A stretch of 63,963 nucleotides of DNA, counting the filler, from Octopus bimaculoides (lineage: Eukaryota), in the NCBI RefSeq assembly GCF_001194135.2. It is 5 parts of 4 records of this genome, joined end to end, with 100 filler letters (N's around TTAATTAATTAA, not from the genome) between each part and the next. Parts side by side here need not be neighbours in the genome. Positions count along the whole stretch, not along the records: positions 38,885 to 59,633 come from NC_069005.1; 4 more parts are not named here. One strand, given 5' to 3'. How positions within the stretch are numbered: the stretch's first letter is position 1; the number at the start of each line of letters is the position of its first letter. This document shows, in pieces, positions 46,657 to 47,419 of the stretch. Made by a program: the position numbers and the translations under genes. Below the pieces are notes generated by a model, which was not told the origin of the DNA, ran no database searches, and saw only the letters and a program-made list of their open reading frames with translations.

Positions 46657-46958
46657 GTGGAACATCAGTTTTGTTAATCTTAGAGGTCATGGTTTGGTCC
46701 CTTCCTCCAAATTCAGCAAGTAAAACAACACAGGCACACACAAACTACAAATCCTGATCCCTTTTTCCTTTTGCAGGGAGTCCAGGACCATTAGTCAACA
46801 TATATTTTCCCCCTAAAATAGTATACAATAGTTACAGCTGGATTGTCTTTGATCATAGATTTACTTGGTCAAATTTGACCTGGGGTTAAACAAAAGAATA
46901 ACAAAAAAACATAATTTTTTTGTTCTTAATTAATAAATTTTCTTTTTTTCTATTTCAG

Positions 46959-47060
46959 GTAAGTTCTATTGGATTATTTTCATTATTATCATATCCTTGC
47001 TTATTTCCACGAAGATGAGACATTCAAGAATTACTTTCATTGTGGGATTAGTGAAGATTA
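46959..47060 (+). other. Recursive-splice-like site (3'ss AG 46957-58 abutting 5'ss GTAAGT) and 102-nt RS-exon-like segment
   Basis: ttcttaat...ttttctttttttctatttcag|gtaagt, with a second consensus donor TTA|gtaagt at 47061. The phase-1 frame is open (KFYWIIFIIIISLLISTKMRHSRITFIVGLVKI). Confidence 0.55.
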
Positions 47061-47419
47061 GTAAGTATGTACTTTTGCCTATTGAAGATAAACTTCTCAT
47101 TTTTTGTTCAATTAACTAACCAATTAACTCATTCAGACAGTATTCTAGCCAACAGGACACACCCTACAGAGACCTGTTTCTAACATTACAAAGCAAACCC
47201 TCTGATAAACACCCCAAGGGAGACTTAAGTGTGGTAGACCAAGAACAAGATCCAACAGAAACTGAAGCATCTGCTGGCAATTACATCTAGGGATAACTGC
47301 AATTTATTGCTAAAGAGTGAGTCAGATGGAGATATCTTGTTAGTGCCCTGTGTTCCACATGGAGTCACAGGAATTAAGAAGTTCAGACTGTAAATTGGTG
47401 ATGGATAAAATGTCCAAAG

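What the first reader, a model, noticed from the sequence alone, without database searches (positions are those of the whole stretch)
46924..47066. Textbook recursive-splicing (ratchet) site with a frame-preserving TM-like RS-exon
Seen in sequence: a branch-like ttcttaat, a long polypyrimidine tract, CAG immediately followed by a perfect GTAAGT, and a second GTAAGT 102 nt downstream. Established: Drosophila ratchet points and vertebrate RS sites have this layout, with a short downstream cryptic exon for exon definition. Inference: the segment is a multiple of 3 and open in phase 1, with a hydrophobic run (KFYWIIFIIIISLLIS). Competition between the two donors could switch a protein between membrane-anchored and soluble forms. 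I am not aware of recursive splicing being characterised in cephalopods.
Basis: partly seen in the sequence, partly recalled or inferred. Interest (0 to 1): 0.72.

Follow-up and report, generated by a model that had tools for sequence, protein, structure and literature searches.

The report
Recursive-splice-like motif in octopus non-coding DNA
A perfect look-alike of a recursive splice site really is present in this octopus DNA and is rarer than chance would predict, but no gene, exon or transcript can be tied to it, its "membrane-segment exon" is a side-effect of T-rich sequence, and a near-equal look-alike sits on the opposite strand, so it remains an untested candidate.

Summary
The sequence is as described. 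A T-rich tract ends in CAG at 46958, GTAAGT follows at 46959, and a second GTAAGT lies 102 nt downstream.

The juxtaposition is rare. It is the top-scoring of 108 AGGT sites in the piece. None of 1288 AGGT sites in 176 kb of Octopus vulgaris and O. sinensis control DNA comes close. I estimate about 230 chance sites of this quality per 2.7-Gb genome.

Everything that would make it a recursive splice site is missing or untestable here:
- No exon or protein match on either strand of the 20.7-kb piece, although the database does hold Octopus proteomes.
- No way to test transcription, junction reads, lariats or conservation.
- A second site of nearly equal quality at 59085 on the opposite strand. 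The two cannot both be sense-strand sites of one gene.

The "frame-preserving TM-like exon" reading is rejected. The segment is 29% G+C, open in one frame of three, and matches no protein. Its hydrophobic run is equalled in about 5% of open windows of this non-coding piece.

Most likely (about 0.55) it is a latent, unused splice-site pair in repeat-rich DNA. A genuine recursive site is about 0.2. Interest is low to moderate. RNA-seq and cross-species alignment would settle it.

The parts
46923..46934 (+). Branch-point-like TTCTTAATTAAT. Two YTNAY matches, with the A at 46929 and 46933 (29 and 25 nt upstream of the acceptor G).
   Evidence: Uninformative on its own: 41% of 28-nt windows of the piece contain YTNAY.
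46938..46958 (+). Polypyrimidine tract plus acceptor, TTTTCTTTTTTTCTATTTCAG. 18/20 pyrimidines, TT at -5/-6, C at -3, AG-free zone of 62 nt.
   Evidence: Fifth-best acceptor-like site of 2247 AG dinucleotides on both strands (score 10.1).
46959..46964 (+). Consensus donor GTAAGT directly abutting the acceptor AG. This would be the regenerated 5' splice site if the site is recursive.
   Evidence: The only AGGTAAGT in the piece.
46959..47060 (+). 102-nt segment between the two donors, the putative cryptic RS-exon. 29% G+C, 41% T, open only in the frame starting at 46961.
   Evidence: No protein or Pfam match. No RNA structure (z = 0.10).
47061..47068 (+). Second donor, TTA|GTAAGTAT. Intron positions +1 to +8 are complementary to the 5' end of U1 snRNA. 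Exon positions -1 to -3 are poor.
   Evidence: The U1 pairing is from established knowledge of the U1 5' end.
46815..46922 (+). Repeat fragment homologous to the reverse complement of about 52810-52895. Its homology ends where the T-rich tract starts.
47422..47899 (+). SINE-like repeat copy downstream. Related copies lie at 44476-44807, 46210-46347 and 46685-46794. It contains a weaker cag|GTGAGT at 47612-47620.

Best explanation
The site is a real, sequence-perfect juxtaposition of a strong 3' splice-site signal and a consensus 5' splice-site signal, followed by a second consensus donor 102 nt downstream. It lies in a short unique AT-rich stretch between repeat fragments. The surrounding 20.7 kb of an octopod genome is gene-less, repeat-rich and microsatellite-rich.

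Most likely it is a latent splice-site pair, a pseudo-exon or decoy, that arose from T-rich low-complexity sequence next to the end of a repeat. I think it is not used as a regulated recursive splice site. It is certainly not a conserved protein-coding exon.

What is shown: the motif, its rarity, the absence of any coding signal, and the competing minus-strand site. What is inferred: that it is not used.

If the plus strand is transcribed as part of a long intron, the signals are strong enough that the spliceosome would probably recognise the 102-nt segment by exon definition. It could then re-splice at the regenerated GTAAGT.
For: - No exon anywhere. The 117-aa reading frame across the site has no hit at E<=10 among 5.8 billion proteins.
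- 81 plus-strand and 84 minus-strand ORFs of at least 30 aa also have no hit at E<=1e-3.
- There are no Pfam domains.
- The database does hold O. vulgaris, O. sinensis and O. bimaculoides proteomes, so these negatives carry weight.
- The surroundings are SINE-like copies, a decayed RTE-type endonuclease ORF, microsatellites and assembly gaps.
- A second site of almost equal quality (17.4 against 18.6) lies on the opposite strand at 59085, with its own downstream donor 68 nt away. At most one of the two can be a sense-strand site of one gene.
- I estimate about 230 chance sites of this quality per genome, and the site was selected by eye for its motif.
- In human only 342 of 36,870 motif-plus-conservation candidates had recursive junction reads in the study's data, and 16 showed a saw-tooth (PMC6110456).
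- The 'exon' has 29% G+C. Its hydrophobic run is matched in 4.9% of open windows of this non-coding piece.
Against: - The motif is rarer than any null predicts: 0.002-0.01 expected per piece, and none of 1288 AGGT sites in 176 kb of Octopus DNA reaches even 15.
- Two such sites in 19 kb is unexpected. Fisher p is 0.006.
- The site meets every sequence criterion of fly ratchet points, including TT at -5/-6, which 99.5% of them share (bioRxiv 10.1101/006163).
- The piece is strongly CpG-depleted: observed/expected ratio (o/e) 0.24, against 0.29-0.67 in control loci and about 0.5-0.6 genome-wide in O. bimaculoides by my estimate from PMC9476566.
- In octopus methylation marks gene bodies, not transposons or intergenic DNA. 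The depletion is therefore compatible with a methylated, transcribed gene body, meaning a long intron.
Confidence: 0.55

Rival explanations
1. It is a genuine recursive splice site (ratchet point) in a long intron, at least 20.7 kb, of a plus-strand gene whose exons lie outside the piece. The 102-nt segment is defined as a cryptic RS-exon and spliced to the upstream exon. The regenerated GTAAGT at 46959 is then used to remove the rest of the intron, so nothing from here reaches the mRNA.
For: - It matches the consensus fully: Y-tract, TT at -5/-6, CAG|GTAAGT (bioRxiv 10.1101/006163).
- It is the best of 108 AGGT sites and far above 1288 control sites.
- A downstream donor sits at a plausible RS-exon distance (PMC8605326 gives about 50 nt, variable, in flies).
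- No coding exon is detectable for 8 kb upstream or 12.6 kb downstream, so if the site is genic the intron is long.
- CpG depletion is compatible with a methylated gene body (PMC9476566).
Against: - No gene, strand or transcript evidence is available.
- A near-equal site lies on the opposite strand.
- The strand-composition skews are ambiguous. T>A fits a plus sense strand, but G>C is the opposite of the invertebrate pattern (PMC5786239).
- Both donors are GTAAGT, whereas in flies skipping needs the ratchet donor to be the stronger (PMC8605326).
- Recursive splicing has not been shown in any mollusc in the library I searched.
Confidence: 0.22
2. It is an ordinary alternative, non-coding or poison cassette exon, 46959-47060, that happens to begin with GT. 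It would be included in some transcripts of an unannotated gene or lncRNA, without obligatory recursive re-splicing.
For: - A strong acceptor and a strong downstream donor sit 102 nt apart, a typical exon size.
- Two GAAGAT purine-rich motifs lie inside the segment.
- Hundreds of annotated human exons start with a reconstitutable donor (PMC6224609 abstract).
Against: - It matches no Octopus protein.
- Stops occur in two of three frames, so it would be a poison exon in most phases.
- G+C is 29%, below the piece average.
- A perfect GTAAGT at its first base would compete strongly for re-splicing.
Confidence: 0.1
3. It is a frame-preserving coding RS-exon encoding a transmembrane segment, whose inclusion switches a protein between membrane-anchored and soluble forms.
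For: The segment is 102 nt (a multiple of 3) and open in one frame. It has a hydrophobic run with a Kyte-Doolittle 16-residue mean of 2.51, reached by 2% of open dinucleotide shuffles.
Against: - There is no homolog at E<=10, although Octopus proteomes are in the database.
- There is no Pfam hit.
- 4.9% of open 102-nt windows in this non-coding piece are equally hydrophobic, and 47% of windows are open in some frame.
- The hydrophobic codons (TTY, ATH, CTN) follow from the segment being 41% T.
- The same open frame runs on through both 'splice sites' (ORF 46937-47116), as expected of chance openness.
- The upstream exon phase is unknown.
Confidence: 0.02

Closest known systems
Drosophila intronic ratchet points (e.g. 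Ubx, kuz, Bx) with cryptic RS-exons
   Same: - Juxtaposed acceptor|donor with a long T-rich tract.
- TT at -5/-6, then CAG|GTAAGT.
- A short downstream segment ending in another donor (bioRxiv 10.1101/006163; PMC8605326; PMC6110457).
   Different: - Fly sites are defined by saw-tooth RNA-seq, junction reads, lariats and ultraconservation inside known long introns. None of these is available here.
- Fly cryptic RS-exons are about 50 nt and usually out of frame, with the ratchet donor stronger than the exon donor. Here the segment is 102 nt and both donors are GTAAGT.
Vertebrate recursive splice sites and RS-exons (Sibley et al. 2015; Blazquez et al. 2018; Zhang et al. 2018)
   Same: The AGGT motif, a strong 3' splice site, and an RS-exon defined by a downstream 5' splice site. 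Competition between the regenerated and downstream donors decides inclusion (PMC6224609; PMC6110456).
   Different: Vertebrate sites are called only in annotated long introns and with high conservation. Even then only about 1% of the motif candidates had recursive junction reads in the study's own data (PMC6110456). No intron, conservation or reads are known here.
Pseudoexons / decoy splice-site pairs in long introns and intergenic DNA
   Same: A good acceptor and donor at exon-like spacing with no coding content, embedded among repeats. A comparable pair lies on the other strand.
   Different: Typical pseudoexons do not have a consensus donor fused directly to the acceptor AG. That fusion is what makes this one rare (none in 176 kb of control DNA).

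Membership tests
Recursive splice site (ratchet point) | [quoted passage not shown] | tested here: met
   CAG|GTAAGT at 46956-46964. Top of 108 AGGT sites in the piece, and above all 1288 in control DNA.
Recursive splice site (ratchet point) | Very strong 3' splice site: prominent pyrimidine tract, with TT at -5/-6 in 99.5% of fly sites | tested here: met
   18/20 pyrimidines, TT at -5/-6, C at -3, 62-nt AG-free zone. The criterion comes from bioRxiv 10.1101/006163 and PMC6110457.
Recursive splice site (ratchet point) | Lies on the sense strand inside a long intron of a transcribed gene | tested here: inconclusive
   No exon or protein match on either strand of the 20.7-kb piece, so no host gene or strand is known. 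CpG depletion hints at a gene body. The composition skews are ambiguous (PMC5786239).
Recursive splice site (ratchet point) | Core motif conserved across related species well above flanking intron | not testable with these tools
   No orthologous cephalopod locus could be retrieved. Window ORFs are not in the protein or contig index. The 176 kb of Octopus DNA I fetched holds no homolog of 46700-47450.
Recursive splice site (ratchet point) | RNA evidence: junction reads into the site, saw-tooth read density, lariats starting at the regenerated donor | not testable with these tools
Recursive splice site (ratchet point) | Downstream cryptic RS-exon bounded by a 5' splice site, for exon definition | tested here: met
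   TTA|GTAAGTAT at 47058-47068, 102 nt downstream. This is weak evidence, because a strong donor within 30-250 nt is expected by chance in about 15-20% of cases.
Recursive splice site (ratchet point) | Regenerated donor stronger than the RS-exon donor, so that the cryptic exon is skipped | tested here: inconclusive
   Both are GTAAGT. The downstream one adds +7/+8 pairing to U1 but has a poor exon side. The strength of the regenerated one depends on the unknown upstream exon end (PMC8605326).
Protein-coding cassette exon encoding a transmembrane segment | Peptide has homologs, or is part of an annotated or predicted protein | tested here: not met
   No hit at E<=10 among 5.8 billion proteins and no Pfam family. 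The database contains three Octopus proteomes.
Protein-coding cassette exon encoding a transmembrane segment | Open frame and hydrophobic run beyond what base composition gives | tested here: inconclusive
   Open in 1 of 3 frames. 24% of shuffles and 47% of real windows are open in at least one frame. The hydrophobicity is reached by 2% of open shuffles and 4.9% of open windows of the piece.

The most novel reading that the evidence does not exclude
The site is a functional recursive splice site in a long intron of an octopus gene. That would be the first documented in a cephalopod, or in any lophotrochozoan. The near-equal minus-strand site at 59085 might then mark a second, antisense or nested long transcript processed in the same way. 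This would suggest that recursive splicing accompanies intron expansion in cephalopod genomes as it does in flies and vertebrates.
Probability: 0.2. Interest if true: 0.55.

Novelty: new member of a known kind. Interest (0 to 1): 0.3.

Why it matters
If the site is used, it would extend recursive splicing beyond insects and vertebrates to a mollusc lineage known for very large, repeat-rich genomes and long neuronal genes. It would also give a concrete locus to test.

The practical lesson is broader. In octopus DNA a strong acceptor fused to a consensus donor is rare: none in 176 kb of control sequence. A genome-wide count of such motifs in sense versus antisense orientation within long introns would therefore be a cheap and decisive test of whether cephalopods use recursive splicing at all.

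As it stands, the finding is a motif match without any evidence of use. Its protein-level interpretation is not supported.

Tried and rejected
- **Coding exon or TM segment.** Rejected. There is no protein or Pfam match, and the composition explains the hydrophobic run.
- **Finding a host gene.** I ran all ORFs of at least 30 aa on both strands, after removing low-complexity, microsatellite-encoded and recognised-repeat ORFs, against 5.8 billion proteins and against Pfam. Nothing came back.
- **Retrieving the same or an orthologous locus.** I looked up ten window ORFs by exact sequence. None is in the collection.
- **The site as part of a repeated element.** Not within the piece or in 176 kb of Octopus DNA. 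Repeat homology stops at about 46922, just upstream.
- **U1 snRNA pseudogene on the minus strand.** ACTTACCTG is the complement of the site, but there is no Rfam match. All Rfam hits in the piece are sub-threshold miRNA models on microsatellites. There are no tRNAs.
- **RNA structure bringing the two donors together.** Rejected, z = 0.10.
- **The two strong sites as arms of an inverted repeat or transposon.** Their flanks share no homology.
- **Strand-composition skew to infer the transcribed strand.** Ambiguous. T>A and G>C on the plus strand give conflicting readings under the invertebrate pattern (PMC5786239).
- **Markov-chain nulls.** They underestimate pyrimidine tracts. I replaced them with a permutation null and with real Octopus DNA.
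- **The GC-rich left edge as bacterial or plasmid contamination.** No plasmid match.

Full report
**Material.** The finding's piece is window 38885-59633. It is 20,749 nt with 1,766 N in five internal gaps and about 38% G+C, which looks like a draft scaffold.

It is crowded with microsatellites and several SINE-like repeat families. It also holds a decayed RTE-type endonuclease ORF at 50594-51250 on the minus strand. That ORF gives a weak Exo_endo_phos_2 hit and has 4,044 relatives. Its best named relatives, at 60-74% identity, are 'craniofacial development protein 2-like' proteins of Octopus vulgaris, O. sinensis and O. bimaculoides.

The result also shows that the protein collection holds Octopus proteomes, so negative searches against it are meaningful.

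**The observation.**
- TTCTTAAT sits at 46923-46930, one base left of the stated start.
- TTTTCTTTTTTTCTATTTCAG ends at 46958.
- GTAAGT lies at 46959-46964 and a second GTAAGT at 47061-47066. The segment between them is 102 nt.
- The frame from 46961 reads KFYWIIFIIIISLLISTKMRHSRITFIVGLVKI.
- 18 of the 20 nt before the AG are pyrimidines. Positions -5/-6 are TT and -3 is C. The nearest upstream AG is 62 nt away.

**How rare is it?** AGGTAAGT occurs once in the piece, against 0.33-0.75 expected on both strands.

I scored all 108 AGGT sites on both strands with a generic juxtaposed acceptor+donor weight matrix. The matrix values are from my memory of metazoan consensus. The site scores 18.6, the highest of the 108.

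A permutation null pairs the empirical acceptor scores of all 2,247 AG with the donor scores of all 2,340 GT. It expects 0.010 sites at or above 18.6 per piece. Markov chains give even fewer, but they underestimate pyrimidine tracts.

As an empirical control I fetched seven loci from O. vulgaris and O. sinensis chromosomes, 176,131 nt in total. Their 1,288 AGGT sites peak at 13.2 and none reaches 15. Five are AGGTAAGT, but none of those has a strong tract.

From the control densities of strong acceptors (0.12/kb) and strong donors (1.4/kb), the chance rate of a strong|strong fusion is about 4e-8 per position and strand. That is about 0.0016 per 19 kb, and still about 230 per 2.7-Gb genome. The motif is rare, then, but a reader scanning a large genome for exactly this pattern will meet chance examples.

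**Accessory features.** None of them is special.
- The branch-like motif is uninformative, because YTNAY occurs in 41% of 28-nt windows.
- A strong donor within 30-250 nt downstream is expected in roughly 15-20% of cases at the measured donor density.
- 24% of dinucleotide shuffles of the 102-nt segment, and 47% of all 102-nt windows of the piece, are open in at least one frame.
- The hydrophobic run (Kyte-Doolittle 16-residue mean of 2.51) is reached by 2% of open shuffles and 4.9% of open real windows.
- The segment is 41% T and 29% G+C, so F/I/L codons are what the composition yields.
- The open frame starts before the acceptor and continues past the second donor (ORF 46937-47116). That is how chance openness looks.

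**Is there a gene?** The 117-residue frame across the site has no hit at E<=10 among 5.8 billion proteins.

I then took all stop-to-stop ORFs of at least 30 aa and filtered out microsatellite and recognised-repeat ORFs. That left 81 on the plus strand and 84 on the minus strand. None has a hit at E<=1e-3. Pfam finds nothing in any ORF. Rfam gives only sub-threshold miRNA models on microsatellites, and there are no tRNAs.

No coding exon is therefore detectable for 8 kb upstream or 12.6 kb downstream of the site, on either strand. If the site is intronic, the intron is at least 20.7 kb. It could equally be intergenic.

[quoted passage not shown] They also state that methylation marks gene bodies, not transposons (PMC9476566).

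One contextual hint favours a gene body. Outside its first 200 nt, the piece has a CpG observed/expected ratio (o/e) of 0.24, or 8.5 CpG per kb. That is below all seven control loci, which range from 0.29 to 0.67. It is also about half the genome average I derive from the 80.66 million CpGs reported for O. bimaculoides (PMC9476566). That derivation rests on my own assumptions for genome size and G+C.

Base skews do not resolve the strand. The plus strand has T>A (+3.8%) and G>C (+6.0%) after masking simple repeats. In invertebrates the sense strand is reported to carry T>A but C>G (PMC5786239).

**Local anatomy.** Homology to another repeat copy (reverse complement of about 52810-52895) runs from about 46815 to about 46922. 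It stops where the T-rich tract begins. SINE-like copies occupy 46210-46347, 46685-46794 and 47422-47899.

The stretch 46925-47420 has no second copy in the piece or in the control DNA. There is no significant RNA structure (z = 0.10).

**An unexpected competitor.** The second-best AGGT site in the piece scores 17.4 and lies on the minus strand: tccctcacttcgttttccAG|GTGAGG. Its acceptor G is at 59085 and it also has TT at -5/-6.

A further donor-like GTGAGC lies 68 nt downstream, at 59016-59011. The 68-nt segment between them has stops in all three frames. Its flanks share no homology with those of the plus-strand site.

Two such sites in 19 kb is surprising. Fisher's test of 2/108 against 0/1288 gives p = 0.006.

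Being on opposite, convergent strands with no exon between them, the two cannot both be sense-strand recursive sites of a single gene. Either at least one is a decoy, or the region carries overlapping transcription. In both cases motif quality alone does not establish use.

**Comparison with what is known.** Published criteria for recursive sites are:
- the AG|GT juxtaposition;
- a very strong 3' splice site, with TT at -5/-6 in 99.5% of fly sites;
- location in long introns;
- high conservation;
- RNA evidence, namely junction reads, a saw-tooth profile and lariats.

These criteria come from bioRxiv 10.1101/006163, PMC6110457 and PMC6110456. Fly ratchet points also carry a short cryptic RS-exon. 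[quoted passage not shown] It is skipped because the regenerated donor out-competes the exon's donor (PMC8605326).

Here the two sequence criteria and the downstream donor are met. The intron criterion is inconclusive. Conservation and RNA evidence cannot be tested.

The predictive value of motif-type evidence is low in the one system where it was quantified. Of 36,870 human sites passing motif, strength and conservation filters, 342 had recursive junction reads in the study's data and 16 showed a saw-tooth (PMC6110456).

No paper in the searched library describes recursive splicing in cephalopods or molluscs.

**Weighing.** I start from about 230 chance sites per genome and an unknown number of true sites, somewhere between tens and hundreds by analogy with vertebrates and flies. 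The downstream donor raises the odds modestly. The gene context is unknown and only weakly favoured by CpG depletion. The opposite-strand competitor counts against.

On that basis I put the probability that 46958/46959 is really used as a recursive site at about 0.2. An ordinary non-coding or poison exon gets about 0.1. A latent, unused splice-site pair gets about 0.55.

**Verdict.** The recursive-splicing reading is a legitimate but untested candidate. The protein-level reading is rejected. Interest is low to moderate (0.3). The cheapest decisive tests are locus annotation, strand-specific total RNA-seq, and a genome-wide sense-versus-antisense count of the motif.

Noticed in passing
window 59011-59105, minus strand: A second recursive-splice-like site of nearly equal quality: tccctcacttcgttttccAG|GTGAGG, with the acceptor G at 59085. 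A further donor-like GTGAGC lies 68 nt downstream, at 59016-59011. The 68-nt segment has stops in all three frames. Its flanks share no homology with those of the plus-strand site.
   Followed up: partly
window 38885-39085: The left edge of the piece is a 201-nt block of 68% G+C with 33 CpGs (o/e 1.43). It ends abruptly at about 39085, and the rest of the piece has CpG o/e 0.24. It could be an unmethylated CpG-island-like promoter or first exon, a GC-rich repeat, or an assembly artefact. It has no Pfam, protein or plasmid match and no good donor site at its right edge.
   Followed up: partly
window 39086-59633: Strong CpG depletion across the whole piece: o/e 0.13-0.42 over most of it in 2-kb windows, and 8.5 CpG/kb overall. 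This is lower than all seven Octopus control loci (0.29-0.67). It is compatible with historical germline methylation, which in octopus marks gene bodies.
   Followed up: partly
window 50594-51370, minus strand: A decayed non-LTR (RTE-like) endonuclease ORF, 219 aa stop-to-stop plus an adjacent 122-aa frame running into an assembly gap. It has 4,044 relatives. The best named ones are 'craniofacial development protein 2-like' of Octopus species at 60-74% identity.
   Followed up: yes
window 41099-41520, plus strand: An ORF with a cysteine-rich motif (CSICRKGVGRNSIRFTQCKLWMYKKCSNIKGRL). From memory it resembles zinc-finger-like motifs seen in invertebrate retroelement ORFs. It has no Pfam hit above noise and abuts a (TA)n microsatellite and an N gap.
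   Followed up: no
window 47612-47620 (plus strand), compared with 44670-44680: A SINE-like copy carries tcatttttgccag|GTGAGT, the third-best AGGT site (score 9.2). The related copy reads gacagCTGAGT at the same place, so a substitution created the AG|GT in one copy. This shows how such motifs arise in repeats.
   Followed up: partly
window 39768-39872, 43817-43942, 45166-45291, 54713-54838; and 44476-44807, 46210-46347, 47422-47731, 52620-52731, 59484-59633: At least two SINE-like repeat families with tRNA-like box-B motifs (e.g. GGGTTCAATCCCA) at 65-90% identity. ARAGORN calls no tRNA.
   Followed up: partly
window 41548-41825, 49248-49257, 51375-51968, 53099-53879, 56949-57051: All five assembly gaps are flanked by (TA)n, (GA)n or (CA)n microsatellites. 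The gaps probably mark unassembled simple repeats rather than missing unique sequence.
   Followed up: no
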